Assembly (NCBI GenBank): GCA_964252035.1
Contig: OZ176206.1
Length of the DNA: 64,000 nucleotides
Origin: Podarcis erhardii
Taxonomy: Eukaryota
Direction: 5' to 3' (one strand)
Below the pieces are notes generated by a model. It saw only the letters and a program-made list of their open reading frames with translations, searched no databases and was not told the DNA's origin. Position 1 is the stretch's first letter. Every line of letters begins with the position of its first letter. The translations under genes were made by a program, and so were the position numbers. Of the stretch, positions 2,483 through 57,888 are shown one piece after another.

Positions 2483-2832
2483 GTGACAACGAGATTGTGA
2501 ACAACATGTACGAAACCGAGGCAGACCTCCTAGCAGGCGAGAGCGGGGAGGAGGAGACCGAGGACAGCATCATGTCCCCCATCCCCGTGGGGCCGCCATC
2601 CCCTTTCCCCGCCGGAGAGGACTTCAACCCCAAGGAAGGCTCTCCGTATGAAGCTCCCGTCTACATCCCCGATGACATTCCAATCCCGCCCGACTTTGAG
2701 CTGAGGGAGTCTTCCATTCCAGGGGCAGGGCTGGGCATCTGGACCAAAAAGAAGATTGAAACTGGGGAAAGATTCGGGCCTTACATGACCTTTCCAAGGA
2801 CGACGTTGAAAGAAGCAAACTTTGGATGGGAG
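2483..2832 (+). CDS. PRDM16: PRDM16 coding exon 2 (N-terminal region and first half of PR/SET domain), internal exon
   Basis: Translation (S)DNEIVNNMYETEADLLAGESGEEETEDSIMSPIPVGPPSPFPAGEDFNPKEGSPYEAPVYIPDDIPIPPDFELRESSIPGAGLGIWTKKKIETGERFGPYMTFPRTTLKEANFGWE aligns without gaps to human PRDM16 as I recall it. VNNMYE and MSPIPVGPPSPFP are PRDM16-specific, not MECOM. Acceptor ttttcaag|GTGAC, donor GAG|gtaaga; 350 nt, phase 1 to phase 0, as in the human exon. Confidence 0.95.
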
Positions 2833-3264
2833 GTAAGAAGGCTTTTGACTAATACGATGGTGATTGGTTTGGCTTTGGAGGAAGGTGCAGCCTTTGTTTT
2901 TGGATGACCTCCAGGACCGGGAAGAAGAGTGGCTTTGTTGATTTCATGTCTTTGTGGATATTCTGATTTTTATTGTGCAATGATTATTTATTGTTATGAA
3001 GGATTCGGTTTCAGTCCCACAAACACACTTTTTGGAAGCTCCACAGCCATTCTTTATAGGGTCCATGGCCTCATAAGATTGAATTATTGAGAAATGGCTT
3101 TTTTTAAGGGCTTTGTGGGAAATTCAAAGTTCAGCACTGATGGGAATGCTGGTTTAAAAGGAGGGTAGTGGTCAGGGGTTGGGCTTGCTGGCATTTGGGG
3201 GTGGGGAAGCAAATGTCCACTTGCTAGCATCAGACCCTTGAGAACCTCCCCCTTTTATTTGTTT

Positions 3265-4149
3265 GAGAGCCAGTGTGGTATAGTGGTTAAGAGCGGTAGA
3301 CTCGTAATCTGGTGAACCGGGTTCAATTCCCTGCTCCTCCACATGCAGCTGCTGGGTGACCTTGGGCTAGTCACACTTCTCTGAAGTCTCTCAGCCCCAT
3401 TCACCTCACAGAGTGTTTAGAATCATAGAATCATAGAGTTGGAAGAGACCACAAGGGCCATCGAGTCCAACCCCCTGCCAAGCAGGAAACACCATCAGAG
3501 CACTCCTGACATATGGTTGTCAAGCCTCTGCTTAAAGACCTCCAAAGAAGGAGACTCCACCACACTCCTTGGCAGCAAATTCCACTGTCGAACAGCTCTT
3601 ACTGTCAGGAAGTTCTTCCTAATGTTTAGGTGGAATCTTCTTTCTTGTAGTTTGGAACCATTGCTCCGTGTCCGCTTCTCTGGAGCAGCAGAAAACAACC
3701 TTTCTCCCTCCTCTATGTGACATCCTTTTATATATTTGAACATGGCTATCATATCACCCCTTAACCTCCTCTTCTCCAGGCTAAACATGCCCAGCTCCCT
3801 TAGCCATTCTTCATAAGGCATCATTTCCAGGCCTTTGACCATTTTGGTTGCCCTCCTCTGGACACGTTCCAGTTTGTCTGTGTCCTTCTTGAACTGTGGT
3901 GCCCAGAACTGGACACAGTACTCCAGGTGAGGTCTGACCAGAGCAGAATACAGTGGCACTATTACTTCCCTTGATCTAGATGCAATACTCCTATTGATGC
4001 AGCCCAGAATTGCATTGGCTTTTTTAGCTGCCGCGTCACACTGTTGGCTCATGTGGAGGAGGAAGGGAAAGGAGAATGTTAGCCACTTTGAGACTCCTTC
4101 AGGTAGTGATAAAGCAGGATATCAAATCCAAACTCTTCTTCTTCTTCTT
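3265..4149 (+). mobile_element. Squam3-type SINE (3265-3418 plus ~4053-4149) interrupted by CR1
   Basis: tRNA-like head GAGAGCCAGTGTGGTATAGTGGTTAAGAGCGGTAGACTCG; body resumes after the CR1 with GGAGGAAGGGAAAGGAGAATGTTAGCC; (CTT)n tail; colinear with copies at 27987 and 32196. Confidence 0.85.
3419..4052 (-). mobile_element. CR1 LINE 3' fragment, young, ORF2 C-terminus still open
   Basis: ORF 3495-4052 reads [48 protein letters not shown]...[14 protein letters not shown], typical CR1 ORF2; 3' UTR ends in (ATTCTATG)n. Confidence 0.95.
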
Positions 4150-25083: not shown

Positions 25084-26406
25084 GAATTGCCTGAACTGAA
25101 TAAACTTTGTACTGGAAGTGATGTGGAGTAACAAGAACATTATCTGTGTTATGTGAGCGGTGTCTTATTCATGCATGTAAGCCCTCGCCTGAGTGTGACA
25201 CAGAGAGAGCCACACGCAAGCTGTCCCAAGCATCTTGAAGCAAGAGCTAGGCAAAAGTTGAATAAACAAATTGAAACACACAGTTCCACGCCATTAGGAG
25301 TGATGTTAGGAATCCTTTAACCAAGCCACTGGCTGATGGGCACTTCCATTATTTTGGAAGGTTGAGACTACAGAGCAAAATGTATCTAAAAATAGTTCAA
25401 CACTCGTCTCTGTCTTGCTCTGTTCTTTCAAAGATACTTTGCTTTCCTGACTTGATTTTACATAAGACAGTGGTGGTTTTCACTGCATTGCTTGTTTTCG
25501 AAACTATGGAACATTTTGTGATCATGACTCCAACAACTGTTTTATGCTGAGGTTTCCACTAGGGAATGGGAGTTCAGCTGGCACCATAAATTGACAGAAC
25601 AAGCTCCCCACGAGAAAGAGAACTTTCCATTATTTCTCAAGGAAGAGTTTTTAGATCTTTGTGCCATGATCTGTTTTCTGGCATTGTTTCAGAATTGGTT
25701 TCTTCAGAATTATTCTGAAAACATCTTTTTAGCGGTGCGTTGTCCATAATTTGGGGAGTGGGCATGTTTATTTCAGAAAAAAGAGAATTTTGTAGCCTCT
25801 TTTTTGTAATAAAATAAAATGAGGTGTTGGTACCTATGCTTTGATAAATTATAAAATGCCTCTCCCACCCCACTCCTCTACTGAATTTTGGCTTACAATT
25901 TGGTTTGAAAAAAATCCAAGCTGGCTACAACTTTCCATAAGGAAGCTTCTCCTCCCCAGGTCTTCAAACATCCTCTCGTCTTGCCCCCCAAACCTTTAGA
26001 GTGGCTGTAACAGGTAGGCCTAATTGTTCCAAGCAACATGGGACAGGGTGATTTTTTTTTTTAAAAAAAGAAGGATGCTGTCATAGTTTGGGCAAGAGGA
26101 ATATGCTGGCAAGCAAAACATTGTTGTTAAGAGTTAAAAGCTGGTGAGTACCCTCCTAATGCCCCTGGGGTGAAAGAAGTCTAAAGCAGGGTTTCCTCAC
26201 CACAGGCTTGCCAAGTTGTGATGCTCTCTCTGTGTGTCTTTGTGTATAAAATGAGATGTTGATGCTCTGTACCAGCACATATAATCAGATGGAAAGCAGA
26301 GCTTGTAGCAACCCAAAGACTAATAAATGTATTGGCATAACTTTTTGTGGGCATTTCTCAGATGTGTGAAGTGGCATCCTAGGTGGTTAGGGAAGAGGAC
26401 ATGGGG

Positions 26407-27043
26407 TGGGGGTTGTGTGGAGAGAGTCTCCTCCTTTAAATTCCTGGGAGTTTACGTTAGTGAAGACCTCACTTGGAAAAACAATATAACTCAGGTGCTT
26501 AGGAAGCCCCACCAGAGACTCCATTTCCTCAGGGTCTTGCGAAAGAACAATGTTAAACAACAATTGATTACCTCCTTCTACCGGTCAACAATAGAAATTG
26601 TCCTCTCATATTGTATCACAGTGTGGTATGTTGGCTTGACAGCCATGGACAGAAAGTCTTTACAGAGGGTGGTGAACACAGCACATGATATCATGGGCTG
26701 TCCCCTGAGCCCTCTAGATGACATCGCAAGGGATCAATGCCTTAGGAGAGTGAGAAATATTATCAGGAACGATTCACACCCCGGCCAGCACCTTTATAAT
26801 CTTCAACCCTCAGGTAGAAGATATAGAAGTATAATCAGTAGTACCAACAGGCTAAAAAACAGTTTCTATCTGTGGGCTGTTAGGCTGCTGAACAGAACAT
26901 AATATAGTGCAACTTACTTTCGGAGATGGTGTGTTGTGCAACAAGCACACAGAGCGCAATGAGATTGAGTGTTTGTGGGGGGGGGAGGCTCAGTTAATTT
27001 CATTGTACACAGGTTGTACATTGACAATAAAGGTATTATTATT
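26407..27043 (+). mobile_element. Rex1/Babar-clade LINE 3' fragment with open ORF2 C-terminus
   Basis: VERVSSFKFLGVYVSEDLTW...HQRLHFLRVLRK...FYRSTIE..L.YCITVWY...DRKSLQRVV...SHPG..LY.L.PSGRRYRS...TNRLKNSFY.WAVRLLN matches the Rex1-type C-terminus; stop at 26900-26902; 3' end GACAATAAAGG(TAT)n. Confidence 0.85.
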
Positions 27044-42980: not shown

Positions 42981-43560
42981 AGAAGACCCCTGGCATCTCC
43001 AGGTGGTCCAAAGCCCTGGAGATCCACTACCAGTCAGTGTGGGAAGCAATGAGCTGCCCACTAATCAGTTCCACTCATCTAGTTTTGGACCCTGCCCATA
43101 CAGTGTGCTTCACAGCCCTAAATGGCTTAGGTCCAGGATGCCTGATCCTCCCAGTCCATTCAGTGAGGTCATTTGGAGAAGTTCTTTTACATGCCTCTCC
43201 ACTCCCCTTGCAGTGAAGGCTGGTCCATTAGGGTGAACAGGGCCCTGCCCTGCCAACCTCAGCCTGCTCTCCACCAGCTCCCACCTGCCTGCCTGCCTTC
43301 TTATATATCACTGGTCCAGGGAGGGGCATGGCCTGCCAGCCTCCTCCTTGTCAGCCCCAGAGTTGCCTCTTGTAGAACTCAGCAGAGAAAAAGATGGGGG
43401 AAGCACTATAGCTGTCTCCTCCTGTCATTGTCTGTAGTGGCACTTTCTCTTGGCATCTACCACCATTGCTCACCTCCACCCAAGGCATTCTCAGTGCATG
43501 CACCTCTGAAACTCTTTGCCCTAGGAAATCCATTCTGACCCCTCCTTGATGACATCCCAT

Positions 43561-44056
43561 NNNNNNNNNNNNNNNNNNNNNNNNNNNNNNNNNNNNNNNN
43601 NNNNNNNNNNNNNNNNNNNNNNNNNNNNNNNNNNNNNNNNNNNNNNNNNNNNNNNNNNNNNNNNNNNNNNNNNNNNNNNNNNNNNNNNNNNNNNNNNNNN
43701 NNNNNNNNNNNNNNNNNNNNNNNNNNNNNNNNNNNNNNNNNNNNNNNNNNNNNNNNNNNNNNNNNNNNNNNNNNNNNNNNNNNNNNNNNNNNNNNNNNNN
43801 NNNNNNNNNNNNNNNNNNNNNNNNNNNNNNNNNNNNNNNNNNNNNNNNNNNNNNNNNNNNNNNNNNNNNNNNNNNNNNNNNNNNNNNNNNNNNNNNNNNN
43901 NNNNNNNNNNNNNNNNNNNNNNNNNNNNNNNNNNNNNNNNNNNNNNNNNNNNNNNNNNNNNNNNNNNNNNNNNNNNNNNNNNNNNNNNNNNNNNNNNNNN
44001 NNNNNNNNNNNNNNNNNNNNNNNNNNNNNNNNNNNNNNNNNNNNNNNNNNNNNNNN
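43561..44056. other. Assembly gap (496 N)
   Basis: Run of N. Confidence 1.
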
Positions 44057-44173
44057 CAATTGGTTAAATACACCCTTTCATTGTTAAAGAATGAATCTCC
44101 CTGCCCCCAAATCCTCATTTGTTCTCAAATCTTACATAGCATCACCAATGACAAAAACAACAAAAGCGTACTA

Positions 44174-44661
44174 CAGTGGTACTTTGGGTTACAGGCACTT
44201 CAGGTTACAAACGCTTCAGGTTACAGACTCCGCTAACCCAGAAATAGTAGAATCATAGAATCATAGAATCATAGAGTTGGAAGAGACCACAAGGGCCATC
44301 GAGTCCAACCCCCTGCCAAGCAGGAAACACCATCAGAGCACTCCTGACATTTGGTTGTCAAGCCTCTGCTTAAAGACCTCCAAAGAAGGAGACTCCACCA
44401 CACTCCTTGGCAGCAAATTCCACTGTCGAACAGCTCTTACTGTCAGGAAGTTCTTCCTAATGTTTAGGTGGAATCTTTTTTCTTGTAGTTTGGAACCTCA
44501 GGTTAAGAACGTTGCTACAGGATGAGAACAGAAATCGTGCTCCAGTGGTGCAGCGGCAGCAGGAGGCCCCATTAGCTAAAGTGGTGCTTCAGGTTAAGAA
44601 CAGTTTCAGGTTAAGAACGGACCTCTGGAACAACTTAAGTACTTAACCCGAGGTACTACTG
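44174..44661 (+). mobile_element. Tc1/mariner-type MITE interrupted by CR1
   Basis: TA|CAGTGGTACTT...AGGTACTACTG|TA; body split at GAAATAGT/ACCTCAGG. Confidence 0.88.
44249..44497 (-). mobile_element. CR1 3' fragment, young (same subfamily as 3419)
   Basis: Two substitutions over about 240 nt versus 3419-3659, plus one extra tail unit. Confidence 0.93.
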
Positions 44662-55512: not shown

Positions 55513-55741
55513 CAGTGGTACCTCAGGTTACAGACACTTCAGGTTACAGACTCCACTAACCCAGAAATAGTACCTCGGGTTAAGAACTTAGCTTCAGGAT
55601 GAGAACAGAAATCATGCAGCTGCGGTGCAGCGGCAGCAGTGGGAGGCCCCATTAGCTAAAGTGGTGCTTCAGGTTAAGAACAGTTTCAGGCTAAGAACAG
55701 ACCTCCGGAACGAATTAAGTTCTTAACCCGAGGTACCACTG
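55513..55741 (+). mobile_element. Tc1/mariner-type MITE
   Basis: TA|CAGTGGTACCTCAGG...CGAGGTACCACTG|TA. Confidence 0.9.
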
Positions 55742-57179
55742 TATGTTGAATTATTTTAATCAGCGTATGCCTGCCCCACCTTCACAAAACAGTGCATCAA
55801 GTGAAGATAAGCATTGTGGTACTAAAGAAATAAAAAAATTCAAAACATCCAATACATAATATGCTTTTAAAAAAGTAATTAAATGAATAAGCAAGCAGGC
55901 AAGCTCCTGGTCATCCTCCCTTAATTTGGTTGTACACAACTTCCAATGTTTTTCTTTTCGCGCCTTTTAAAAAACAAAGCATCATCTAATTAATGGAAAT
56001 GCAAGGTTGGAACAAATTATGCCATCTAAATTTGCAACTATTCACACACAAAAACACAAAGATGGTTTCTGAGCATAAATAAAAATAATAAAGCATGCAG
56101 AAAAGCCAGCACAACCCCCCCCCCAGCATTAATGAAAAGTCTGAACTGCAAATAGACATGGAGTCATCAGAGGATGAACCAAACACCACAAATGGTTGAG
56201 GACCTTGAGGAACTGGCAGGGTCCAACCTAGAACCAGCATGGAGGAGACTTGCTGAAGAACCCATGGAGATGTCAGAAGAGGTGGTGGAGCCACTTCCCT
56301 ATCTCCAAGAAGGCCAGAAAGAAAAGGTCCCAAGGGTGACATAGCATGCCTCTACTGAGCCACAGTCATTGTGTGGCTTGGGAAAAAGCAATCCCTGAAA
56401 TTCGTTCCCTACCAGTCGGGGTGGTCTAGGAGGCCAGAGTAGATTCCTCTTAAAGCTGTGCTGTTGCTGGAAGTGAAATAGGTCTCTGGCTCCTTGTTCT
56501 GGTTCCTGCAGTGCTGCACATTGCCTGAACATCCTGTAATATTGAACTCTGGGCTGCTTCCTGACCTTTTCTTTGAATCATGTTTTGGACCTAAGTAGTT
56601 CCCTGTGACTGACCTTGCTGCACCTGCAATGTTGCCCTCACTGGGAAGAGTTTTGCTAAGGGGCTTACACCTCCTGAGACTGGGCCTTTGAGGGCACCCA
56701 GTCAGGAGTGCGGTGGGTAGAACAGGTCGGTGTAAGGAGAAACTTCACCTCCTGACCTCCTGTGGCATCGAGTGGCTTCCATGTCGCTGCCACAGTTCTT
56801 TAGCTTTGATTTCTGTCGCGTCATGTTCAGCAGATTCGTGATCAGCTGAATCGTTTTCACCGTTGTGTGGCTCACGGTTGCATTGTGTTGCTGACAAAGA
56901 GGCTGTTGGCTTTGTCCCTTTTGCAGTCAATTGTTCTGCAGTCCATAAACTTCTTTGTCTGAAATTAAGAAAACGACAGCGCAGTGTTGAGTCAGAGCTC
57001 AATATTTATGTTACGGTGAACTTGTCGGGGGAAGCCTGGGATGTTCTGCTGCCTGAGGCCAAGGGCAAGATGGTGTTCCCATCTTCAAAAATCGGAAGGG
57101 CTATCATATGGAAGCAAGCTTGCTTTCCACTGTTCCAAAATGGAGGACCTGATCAAATGGATTCAAACTACAAGAAATG

Positions 57180-57386
57180 AGCTTTTGACTAAATGTTAGG
57201 AAGAACTTTCTGCAGGTACAAGCTGTTCAACACTGAAAAGAACTAGCTTAAAAGGTGGTAGACTCTCCTTTATTGGAGGTTTTCAAACAGAGGTTGGATG
57301 GCCACGTGCCAGGCATTCTTTAGCCTGCATTGAAGGCAATGGACTAGGTGGCCCTTGTGGTCCTTTCCATCTCTACAATGGTATGG
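57180..57386 (+). mobile_element. Degraded CR1 3' end
   Basis: GTTAGGAAGAACTTTCTG...CTCTCCTTTATTGGAGGTTTTCAAACAGAGGTTGGATGGCCA...GGACTAGGTGGCCCTTGTGGTCCTTTCC. Confidence 0.7.
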
Positions 57387-57505
57387 TTTTATGATTCAAT
57401 CTTAGCAGGTGCACAAAGCTCTTTTCAGGTGGCACACACTACCACTGGCCCCCACCCAAACCACATTAACCACTACCAGAGGTTACCAGAATCACTACCA
57501 GAGAT

Positions 57506-57641
57506 TCTTCGTATCTGAAGAAGTGTGCATGCACACGAAAGCTCATACCTAGAACTAACTCAGTTGGTCTTTAAGGTGCTACTGGAAGGAATTTTTTTAT
57601 TTTGTTTTGACCATGGCAGACCAACACGGCTACCTATCTGT
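57506..57641 (+). mobile_element. Penelope-like element (PLE) pseudo-LTR remnant
   Basis: CTGAAGAAG...CACGAAAGCTCATAC...GTTGGTCTTTAAGGTGCTACTGG...GCAGACCAACACGGCTAC is the characteristic reptile PLE terminal sequence; flanked by AATCACTACCAGAGAT (57490-57505) / AACCACTACCAGAGGT (57642-57657). Confidence 0.75.
57511..57548 (+). ncRNA. Minimal type I hammerhead ribozyme motif (PLE-associated)
   Basis: Stem I GUAU (57511-14) pairs with AUAC (57545-48); core CUGAAGA (57515-21); extra A (57522); stem II GUGUG-CAUG-CACAC (57523-36); GAAA (57537-40); loopless palindromic stem III AGCU (57540-43); cleavage triplet CUC ending at 57544. Confidence 0.8.
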
Positions 57642-57888
57642 AACCACTACCAGAGGTGACTGTTTCACTTTGCCTAATGGTGGGGCCGGCCCTATGCTCA
57701 CTGAGGCAGAGAAACTATGCTTGGGCTGCACTCTCACAGGCTTGCAGATTGGGAAACGTGAGGCCAAATGCTCCTCTATCCAGACAAAACAATCCCTTGA
57801 CCATAGAAAAATCATCCATGACAGGGATCCTAACCTCTGTGATCTGATGGCTTGCACCGATGAATGATACTTTTTCTTCCTCCCTGCG

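What the first reader, a model, noticed from the sequence alone, without database searches (positions are those of the whole stretch)
57511..57548. Complete hammerhead ribozyme core on the sense strand of PRDM16 intron 2
Seen: GUAU-CUGAAGA-A-GUGUGCAUGCACAC-GAAA-GCUC/AUAC. Stem I (4 bp), the CUGANGA box, stem II, GAAA and an NUH triplet (CUC) are all in register. Stem III is only the palindrome AGCU, stem II is a perfect 14-nt palindrome, and an extra A follows A9. Known: Penelope-like elements carry such minimal hammerheads, which usually cleave as dimers, and an extra A after A9 is tolerated in a natural viroid hammerhead. Inference: because the motif is in sense orientation, every PRDM16 pre-mRNA would carry it. 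It is a single copy with a short stem I, so cleavage may need RNA dimerisation or may be negligible.
Basis: partly seen in the sequence, partly recalled or inferred. Interest (0 to 1): 0.72.

Follow-up and report, generated by a model that had tools for sequence, protein, structure and literature searches.

The report
Penelope retrotransposon fragment with minimal hammerhead
The hammerhead ribozyme motif is real, but it most likely arrived in this PRDM16 intron on a 157-base fragment of a Penelope-like jumping gene, whose ribozymes cut very poorly unaided, so it is probably an ordinary passenger and not a regulator of the gene.

Summary
The sequence at 57511-57548 (+) reads GUAU-CUGAAGA-A-GUGUGCAUGCACAC-GAA-AGCU-C|AUAC. 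It is the only such motif in the window, against 0.027 expected by chance per 64 kb.

It is not a free-standing intron feature. It lies in a 157-bp insertion (57484-57640) flanked by a perfect 17-bp direct repeat read as a target-site duplication, with no poly(A) and no ORF.

Every feature that Cervera and de la Peña (2014) list for metazoan Penelope-like element (PLE) minimal hammerheads is present:
- helix I of 4 bp;
- a long helix II closed by G10.1-C11.1;
- an extra base after A9;
- palindromic 15.1-16.1 with no loop 3.

The Anolis Poseidon_Ac hammerhead, tested at the bench, has the same layout. The insertion ends 120 nt after A9, close to that element's internal reverse-transcription start (111-118 nt).

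Best reading: the 5'-truncated terminal module of a lizard PLE, inert in cis. The PRDM16 gene and the sense strand are confirmed; the intron number is not.

Not tested: other copies, the orthologous site and RNA ends. Rfam hammerhead models do not score it.

Earlier notes from this scan report the same kind of element many times on other DNA of this genome. Interest is low.

The parts
57467..57483 (+). Left copy of the 17-bp target-site duplication, TAACCACTACCAGAGGT. ATT (57465-57467) overlaps its left edge.
   Evidence: this copy is 100% identical over 17 bp to 57641-57657. CACTACCAGAG occurs exactly only at 57471, 57493 and 57645 in 64 kb.
57484..57510 (+). 5' junction stretch of 27 nt: TACCAGA + ATCACTACCAGAGAT + TCTTC. 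It holds a partial copy and an imperfect third copy of the target. It is probably templated filler at the 5' join of a truncated copy. Its last bases (57505-08) can extend helix I.
   Evidence: (third copy 57489-57508, 75% identity). The origin is inferred, not shown.
57511..57548 (+). Minimal type-I hammerhead motif, with these parts: helix I GUAU/AUAC; core CUGAAGA at 57515-21; bulged A at 57522; helix II at 57523-36; GAA at 57537-39; AGCU at 57540-43; C17 at 57544.
   Evidence: The features match the metazoan PLE min-HHR consensus in PMC4209133 and the layout of the Poseidon_Ac hammerhead.
57544..57545 (+). Predicted self-cleavage site, between C17 and A1.1.
   Evidence: This follows from hammerhead numbering applied. 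It is not tested.
57549..57640 (+). The rest of the element's terminal module. It holds a T-rich tract (57594-57611) and an AC-rich stretch, CAGACCAACACGGCUACC. It ends without poly(A) at 57640, which is 120 nt after A9.
   Evidence: The distance is compared with the Poseidon_Ac reverse-transcription start at 111-118 nt after the ATG, whose A is A9. The role is inferred by analogy.
57563..57625 (+). Predicted stem-loop closed by GUUGGUCU (57563-70) pairing with AGACCAAC (57618-25). It is a candidate protein-binding or reverse-transcription-start structure.
   Evidence: minimum-free-energy fold; the z-score of the whole 149 nt is not significant, -0.37.
57641..57657 (+). Right copy of the 17-bp target-site duplication.
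2560..2835 (+). PRDM16 PR-domain exon, used only to fix the gene and the sense strand.
   Evidence: 2n1i_A PRDM16 E 2.7e-36; MECOM 1.7e-22.

Best explanation
The motif belongs to a short, 5'-truncated insertion of a lizard Penelope-like retrotransposon (PLE). The inserted DNA (57484-57640) is the element's last module. It runs from the minimal hammerhead at the pLTR/ORF junction to the internal site where the element's reverse transcriptase starts cDNA synthesis on nicked target DNA. Integration duplicated 17 bp of target.

The copy has no promoter or ORF of its own, so it is transcribed only as part of the PRDM16 intron. A lone hammerhead of this kind cannot form helix III, which is only the palindrome AGCU. 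It would need a second copy, or the element's own protein, to cut. Cleavage of PRDM16 pre-mRNA is therefore expected to be negligible, and the copy is a neutral passenger.

Shown here: the motif, the flanking duplication, the lack of poly(A) and ORF, and the strand.

Inferred: PLE parentage, from the published signature and layout; the 3' end as a reverse-transcription start; and inactivity.
For: The motif is exact and unique in the window. Chance gives 0.027 per 64 kb with the loose descriptor and 0 in 300 shuffles with the palindromic helix III.

A perfect 17-bp direct repeat flanks a 157-bp insert. The insert has no poly(A) tail.

PMC4209133 lists four features of metazoan PLE min-HHRs that were not part of its search descriptor:
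- a base between positions 9 and 10.1;
- a G10.1-C11.1 pair;
- palindromic 15.2-16.2;
- a long helix II with a helix I of 4-5 bp.
All four are present here. The same paper reports such motifs in reptiles, mostly as single truncated copies.

Poseidon_Ac of Anolis reads CCU-CUGAGGA-U-helix II-GAA-ACGU-C|AGG, which is the same architecture. Its reverse transcription starts 111-118 nt after A9 in an AC-rich stretch. Here the insert ends 120 nt after A9, just past CCAACAC.

The target is AT-rich at the nick (CATTAAC), in line with the ATT preference reported in PMC11167929.

PMC8557442 describes heavy 5' truncation as typical of PLEs.

Notes from this scan report about 130-nt hammerhead-headed PLE mini-copies elsewhere in this genome. 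From 57511 to 57640 is 130 nt. These notes are leads only.
Against: No second copy of the element could be examined:
- there is none in the window;
- there is none in the viral, metagenome or prokaryote collections;
- there are no protein-level look-alikes;
Family membership, link to an RT/GIY-YIG ORF and covariation are therefore untested here.

The sequence is not similar to Poseidon_Ac beyond its layout.

Rfam hammerhead models give no hit even at E<=10.

The 27 nt between the left duplication and the motif are unexplained. They leave open that the 17-bp repeat is a PLE 'tail' and not a target-site duplication.

The fold energies are not better than those of shuffled sequence.
Confidence: 0.8

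Rival explanations
1. It is a copy of a separate small non-autonomous element, of the retrozyme or SINE kind. Such an element would be a roughly 130-nt hammerhead-headed RNA with its own life cycle, mobilised in trans by PLE enzymes, and not a truncated copy of the autonomous element.
For: The hammerhead-to-end unit is a compact 130 nt. A 2026 preprint argues that animal non-LTR retrozymes derive from PLE pLTRs.
Against: It is a monomer, with no tandem repeat and no second hammerhead. Retrozymes are defined by tandem units. The follow-up agent on s1-234774 preferred run-off or truncated copies of the autonomous PLE (unverified). One locus cannot tell the two readings apart.
Confidence: 0.12
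2. It is an exapted intronic ribozyme that cleaves PRDM16 pre-mRNA and tunes the gene's output, like the conserved intronic hammerheads of amniotes.
For: It is in sense orientation within a PRDM16 intron, the catalytic core is complete, and the minimum-free-energy fold is compatible with a hammerhead.
Against: The perfect 17-bp flanking repeat points to a fairly recent insertion. Helix III cannot form in a monomer. Single min-HHRs show no detectable cleavage (PMC4209133). The Anolis PLE hammerhead needs its own protein, and no RNA-seq reads end at its cut site (PMC11167929). There is no second copy in the window for dimer formation. The Rfam HH9/HH10 models do not match.
Confidence: 0.03
3. 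It is a chance hammerhead-like string inside an unrelated short insertion or local duplication.
For: The loose descriptor gives about 0.027 hits per 64 kb, which means hundreds of chance hits in a genome of gigabase size. Rfam models do not score it. The fold z-scores are unremarkable.
Against: Adding the palindromic helix III gave 0 hits in 300 shuffles. The bulged base, G10.1-C11.1 and the helix lengths all agree with the PLE signature (PMC4209133). The motif sits in a 157-bp flanked insert at a PLE-like distance from the insert's 3' end. A chance motif has no reason to do that: 157 bp is about 0.25% of the window.
Confidence: 0.05

Closest known systems
Metazoan PLE minimal hammerheads (min-HHR; Cervera and de la Peña 2014, PMC4209133)
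   Same: The CUGANGA / GAA / A15.1...U16.1-H17 core is shared. So are a helix I of 4-5 bp, a long helix II, an unpaired base between A9 and G10.1, the G10.1-C11.1 pair, and palindromic 15.x-16.x with no loop 3. These motifs are mostly found as single motifs in truncated copies, and are reported in reptiles.
   Different: Helix II here is a perfect 14-nt palindrome. No RT/EN ORF or pLTR pair lies next to this copy. I could not examine family consensus or covariation.
Poseidon_Ac (PAc) hammerhead of Anolis carolinensis (Frangieh et al. 2024, PMC11167929)
   Same: It has the same order and spacing: a short helix I, CUGANGA, one extra base, helix II, GAA, a 4-nt palindrome (ACGU there, AGCU here) and C17. 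An AC-rich stretch with CAACAC lies about 80 nt after the cut site. The copy ends about 111-120 nt after A9.
   Different: There is no sequence similarity beyond the core, so this is a different PLE lineage. In PAc the ORF starts at A9. Here the ATG in the helix II loop runs into TAG after 7 codons. PAc activity was shown at the bench and needs its protein; nothing was tested here.
Non-LTR retrozymes / newt and Schistosoma hammerhead repeats
   Same: They have type-I hammerheads with an unstable palindromic helix III that act as dimers, and they are related to PLE pLTRs.
   Different: Those are tandem arrays that yield circular RNAs and have canonical helix I/II loop contacts. This is a lone monomer.
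Conserved amniote intronic hammerheads (Rfam HH9 RF02275, HH10 RF02277)
   Same: They are sense-strand hammerheads in an intron of a vertebrate gene.
   Different: Those are monomer-competent with a stable helix III and are conserved across amniotes. This one gives no Rfam match and looks like a recent insertion.

Membership tests
Metazoan PLE min-HHR (PMC4209133) | Conserved core: C3U4G5A6N7G8A9, G12A13A14, A15.1-U16.1, H17 | tested here: met
   CUGAAGA at 57515-21, GAA at 57537-39, A57540...U57543, C57544.
Metazoan PLE min-HHR (PMC4209133) | Short open helix I (4-5 bp) and long helix II closed by G10.1-C11.1 | tested here: met
   GUAU/AUAC is 4 bp, with an optional UUCU/AGAA extension. Helix II is a 14-nt palindrome, G57523-C57536.
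Metazoan PLE min-HHR (PMC4209133) | Unpaired base between A9 and G10.1 | tested here: met
   A57522.
Metazoan PLE min-HHR (PMC4209133) | Palindromic 15.2-16.2, helix III minimal or absent (dimer design) | tested here: met
   AGCU at 57540-43; 0 of 300 shuffles meet the descriptor with this requirement.
Metazoan PLE min-HHR (PMC4209133) | Belongs to a genomic family of copies with compensatory changes; some copies lie in pLTRs flanking an RT + GIY-YIG ORF | not testable with these tools
   There is no other copy in the window. The collections hold no lizard copy. No long ORF is called beside the insert, and Pfam on ten of the window's longest ORFs gave only a LINE-type ALKBH8_N hit, no RT or GIY-YIG.
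Metazoan PLE min-HHR (PMC4209133) | Self-cleavage at H17 (as a dimer or with protein help) | not testable with these tools
   This needs a bench assay or raw RNA reads.
PLE insertion (structure; PMC8557442, PMC11167929) | 5'-truncated copy, flanking target duplication, no poly(A), 3' end at an internal reverse-transcription start, AT-rich nick site | tested here: met
   One search shows the 17-bp duplication. One search shows no poly(A) and CATTAAC at the nick. The insert ends 120 nt after A9, against 111-118 nt in PAc. The last point is an analogy across lineages, not an alignment.
Rfam hammerhead families (Hammerhead_1 RF00163, Hammerhead_3, Hammerhead_II, HH9, HH10) | Covariance-model score at or above the gathering threshold | tested here: not met
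   there is no hammerhead hit even at E<=10 on a 177-nt search. This is expected for a motif with no helix III hairpin.
Non-LTR retrozyme | Two or more hammerhead units in tandem | tested here: not met
   there is one motif and one copy in 64 kb.

The most novel reading that the evidence does not exclude
In cells where an active PLE of this lineage expresses its protein, that protein might bind the stem-loop module (57563-57625) of this intronic copy and switch on its hammerhead. Alternatively, two PRDM16 transcripts might pair through the 14-nt palindrome of helix II. Either way, retrotransposon activity would cut nascent PRDM16 pre-mRNA at 57544/57545. That would be a transposon-dependent, protein-assisted ribozyme switch on a host developmental gene.
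Probability: 0.03. Interest if true: 0.55.

Novelty: new member of a known kind. Interest (0 to 1): 0.12.

Why it matters
It matters little for PRDM16 biology. The copy is best read as one of many dispersed, truncated PLE ends.

Its modest value is as a clean example:
- a minimal hammerhead-to-RT-start module with intact flanking duplications;
- support for the idea that the internal reverse-transcription start mapped in vitro for Anolis Poseidon_Ac may also fix the 3' ends of copies in another lizard PLE lineage;
- a 5' junction with reiterated target sequence that may bear on how PLE insertions are resolved.

It also shows that hammerhead 'hits' in introns of PLE-rich genomes should first be checked for flanking duplications.

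Tried and rejected
- **Rfam cmscan.** I searched 5 kb and then 177 nt at E<=10 and found no hammerhead family. The weak hits (CRISPR-DR, U4, Gl_U6, mir-322) are noise.
- **Second copies in the window.** Pattern searches with 3 mismatches, blastn with word size 7 and nhmmer found none.
- **Public reads.** No human-likeness was stated, so I went on using other tools on the same stretch and say so here.
- **Collection scans.** A 19-mer of the AC-rich end gave 0 viral hits and 8 metagenome hits. All 8 were matches of 20-30 nt; the contig I read in full (L003) is a bacterial-type contig with an inverted duplication. The hammerhead pattern gave 0 hits in prokaryote genomes and viral contigs.
- **Papers.** No paper holds three diagnostic strings of the element.
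- **Protein-level routes to other copies.** The 41-aa open frame of the element gave nothing in phmmer against 1.8 billion representatives or in the word-index search.
- **Fetching lizard DNA through a LINE ORF of the window.** ORF 26327-26899 found relatives that were 48-61% identical wherever a contig was on record, and the named ones were mostly fish. The two contigs fetched, both from GCA_977065575.1, share nothing with the window or the element.
- **Paralogous 'empty site'.** I searched the window for one and found none.
- **Double-hammerhead through AGCU as the stable dimer.** I rejected this. Cofolding prefers pairing of the helix II palindromes (-41.6 against 2 x -12.3 kcal/mol). The designed double hammerhead of the 38-mer is only -11.1 against 2 x -6.8 kcal/mol.
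- **Lünse et al. 2017 (PMC5785218).** The paper is not held. Its conclusion is taken from the review PMC6765202.

The N run at 43561-44056 was left untouched.

Full report
**Observation.** In hammerhead numbering they read:
- GUAU, helix I 5' strand, 57511-14;
- C3-A9 CUGAAGA, 57515-21;
- an extra A, 57522;
- helix II GUGUGCAUGCACAC, 57523-36, closed by G10.1-C11.1;
- G12 A13 A14, 57537-39;
- A15.1 G15.2 C16.2 U16.1 (AGCU), 57540-43;
- C17, 57544;
- AUAC, helix I 3' strand, 57545-48.

A descriptor scan of my own found this as the only hit on either strand of the window. The descriptor asked for helix I of at least 4 bp, helix II of at least 4 bp, an optional base after A9, and A...U-H. In 300 dinucleotide-preserving shuffles it gave 0.027 hits per 64 kb, and none when a palindromic helix III was required.

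The motif is therefore unusual for a window. On its own it is not decisive for a whole genome.

The monomer minimum-free-energy fold forms helices I and II. It extends helix I by UUCU/AGAA across a 2x2 internal loop. Its energy is not better than shuffled sequence, with a z-score of -0.93.

**Gene and strand.** An exon at 2560-2835 (+) matches the PR domain of PRDM16 (PDB 2n1i_A, E 2.7e-36) better than MECOM (1.7e-22). The + strand is therefore the sense strand, and the motif lies about 55 kb downstream in an intron. I did not verify that it is intron 2.

**Context: an insertion.** The motif lies inside a 157-bp stretch (57484-57640) flanked by a perfect 17-bp direct repeat, TAACCACTACCAGAGGT, at 57467-83 and 57641-57. 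The stretch has no poly(A) or simple-repeat tail. No ORF of 110 aa or more is called within the insert. The hammerhead-to-end unit (57511-57640) is 130 nt. The sequence at the left edge of the repeat is CATTAAC, which is AT-rich.

Between the left repeat and the motif are 27 nt (TACCAGA + ATCACTACCAGAGAT + TCTTC). They contain a partial copy and an imperfect third copy of the target. The 11-mer CACTACCAGAG occurs exactly only at these three places in 64 kb. I read this as templated filler at the 5' join, but one locus cannot show that.

**What the literature says about such motifs.** Cervera and de la Peña (PMC4209133) defined minimal hammerheads in the pLTRs of metazoan Penelope-like elements. 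These have a helix I of 4-5 bp, a helix II of 7-8 bp, and an unpaired base at the 5' end of helix II.

As features not imposed by their descriptor, they list:
- the base between positions 9 and 10.1;
- the G10.1-C11.1 pair;
- the palindromic 15.2-16.2.

All are present here. They found such motifs mostly as single copies in truncated elements, and in reptiles. Single motifs did not cleave detectably, and dimers cleaved poorly.

Frangieh et al. (PMC11167929) studied Poseidon_Ac of Anolis carolinensis. From their deposited consensus, its hammerhead reads CCU-CUGAGGA-U-helix II-GAA-ACGU-C|AGG. That is the same layout as here, including the extra base, the 4-nt palindrome in place of helix III, and C17.

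In that element:
- the ORF's ATG begins at A9;
- reverse transcription starts inside the RNA, 111-118 nt into the ORF, in an AC-rich stem-loop (ACAACACA);
- the hammerhead cleaves only when the element's protein is present;
- C3G and G8C abolish cleavage, and the double mutant partly restores it;
- no public RNA-seq reads end at the cut site.

Here A9 is 57521, so the insertion ends 120 nt after it. CCAACAC lies 78 nt after C17, against 83 nt in Poseidon_Ac. Craig et al. (PMC8557442) describe heavy 5' truncation, partial tandems and 30-40-bp 'tails' as typical of these elements.

**Reading.** The simplest account is a 5'-truncated insertion of a lizard Penelope-like element that keeps only its terminal module, from the hammerhead to the reverse-transcription start. 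The sequence is not similar to Poseidon_Ac outside the core, so it would be another lineage.

The predicted fold of the module has a stem-loop closed by GUUGGUCU/AGACCAAC (57563-70 with 57618-25) just before the end. By analogy it could be the protein-binding or initiation structure. This is inference, and the fold is not statistically distinctive.

**Activity.** Helix III cannot form within one molecule. Cofolding two copies does not favour the classical double hammerhead. The designed structure of the 38-mer pair is -11.1 kcal/mol, against -13.6 for two monomers. The strongly preferred dimer pairs the two helix II palindromes (-41.6 against 2 x -12.3 kcal/mol for the 66-mer).

No second motif exists in the window. 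Taken with the published data, cleavage of PRDM16 pre-mRNA by this copy should be negligible, unless the cognate protein acts on it in trans. From general knowledge, not tested here: slow ribozymes placed in introns do not disturb co-transcriptional splicing.

**What could not be done.** I could not examine any other copy of the element.
Copy number, variation between copies, expression and RNA ends are therefore untested. Because no human-likeness was stated, I continued with other tools on the same stretch.
- Scans of viral, metagenome and prokaryote collections gave only chance matches or none.
- Protein-level searches with the element's open frame found nothing.
- An attempt to reach lizard DNA through a LINE ORF of the window led to an unrelated genome.
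- Rfam hammerhead models do not score the motif. That is expected for a hammerhead without a helix III hairpin, but I record it as a failed membership test for those models.

**Earlier notes of this scan.** Notes on other pieces of the same genome describe an abundant, apparently active Penelope-like element. They report about 130-nt hammerhead-headed mini-copies and a promoter block abutting the hammerhead. They agree with my reading, which I had formed before seeing them, and with the 130-nt length measured here. They are unchecked AI notes, and I could not compare sequences. This copy has no TATA-like block in the 27 nt upstream. That fits a copy made from an RNA that began near the hammerhead, or a plain truncation.

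**Verdict.** It is an ordinary member of a known kind. Interest is low.

My confidences are:
- truncated Penelope-like copy, 0.8;
- a distinct small non-autonomous derivative, 0.12;
- chance motif, 0.05;
- exapted PRDM16 ribozyme, 0.03.

Noticed in passing
window 57484-57510: The 5' junction of the insertion carries a partial copy (TACCAGA) and an imperfect third copy (ATCACTACCAGAGAT) of the 17-bp target. CACTACCAGAG is exact only at 57471, 57493 and 57645. It may be templated filler from the 5' join of a PLE insertion, or it may relate to the PLE 'tail'.
   Followed up: partly
window 57523-57536: Helix II is a perfect 14-nt palindrome. In cofolding, two RNAs pair through it far more strongly (-41.6 against 2 x -12.3 kcal/mol) than through the helix III palindrome. 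This would be a possible domain-swapped dimer, which the papers read here do not discuss for PLE hammerheads.
   Followed up: partly
window 26327-26899 (+): A 191-aa ORF with a Pfam ALKBH8_N hit (E 7.6e-15). This is the C-terminal part of a LINE reverse transcriptase. Relatives on record with a contig are 48-61% identical, and the named ones are mostly fish. It is an old LINE fragment.
   Followed up: partly
window 57200-57397; 44250-44456 and 3418-3618 (other strand): An old dispersed repeat of about 200 bp, about 67% identical between copies, lies just upstream of the insertion site. It does not span the site.
   Followed up: no
window 55657-55743 (-): A long near-perfect hairpin (arms ...CAGUGGUACCUCGGGUUAAGAAC / GUUCUUAACCUGAAGCACCACU...) scores weakly as mir-322 (21 bits against a gathering score of 62, E 0.94). 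It is probably an inverted-repeat element, not a miRNA gene.
   Followed up: no
window 43561-44056: A run of 496 N (a gap or masked stretch) was left untouched. ORFs listed across it (43351-44118 and others) are artefacts of the N run.
   Followed up: no
L003 1074-1103 and 6130-6154: A soil-type metagenome contig fetched through a chance 19-mer match carries an inverted duplication of several hundred bases at both ends. It is unrelated to the lizard element.
   Followed up: no
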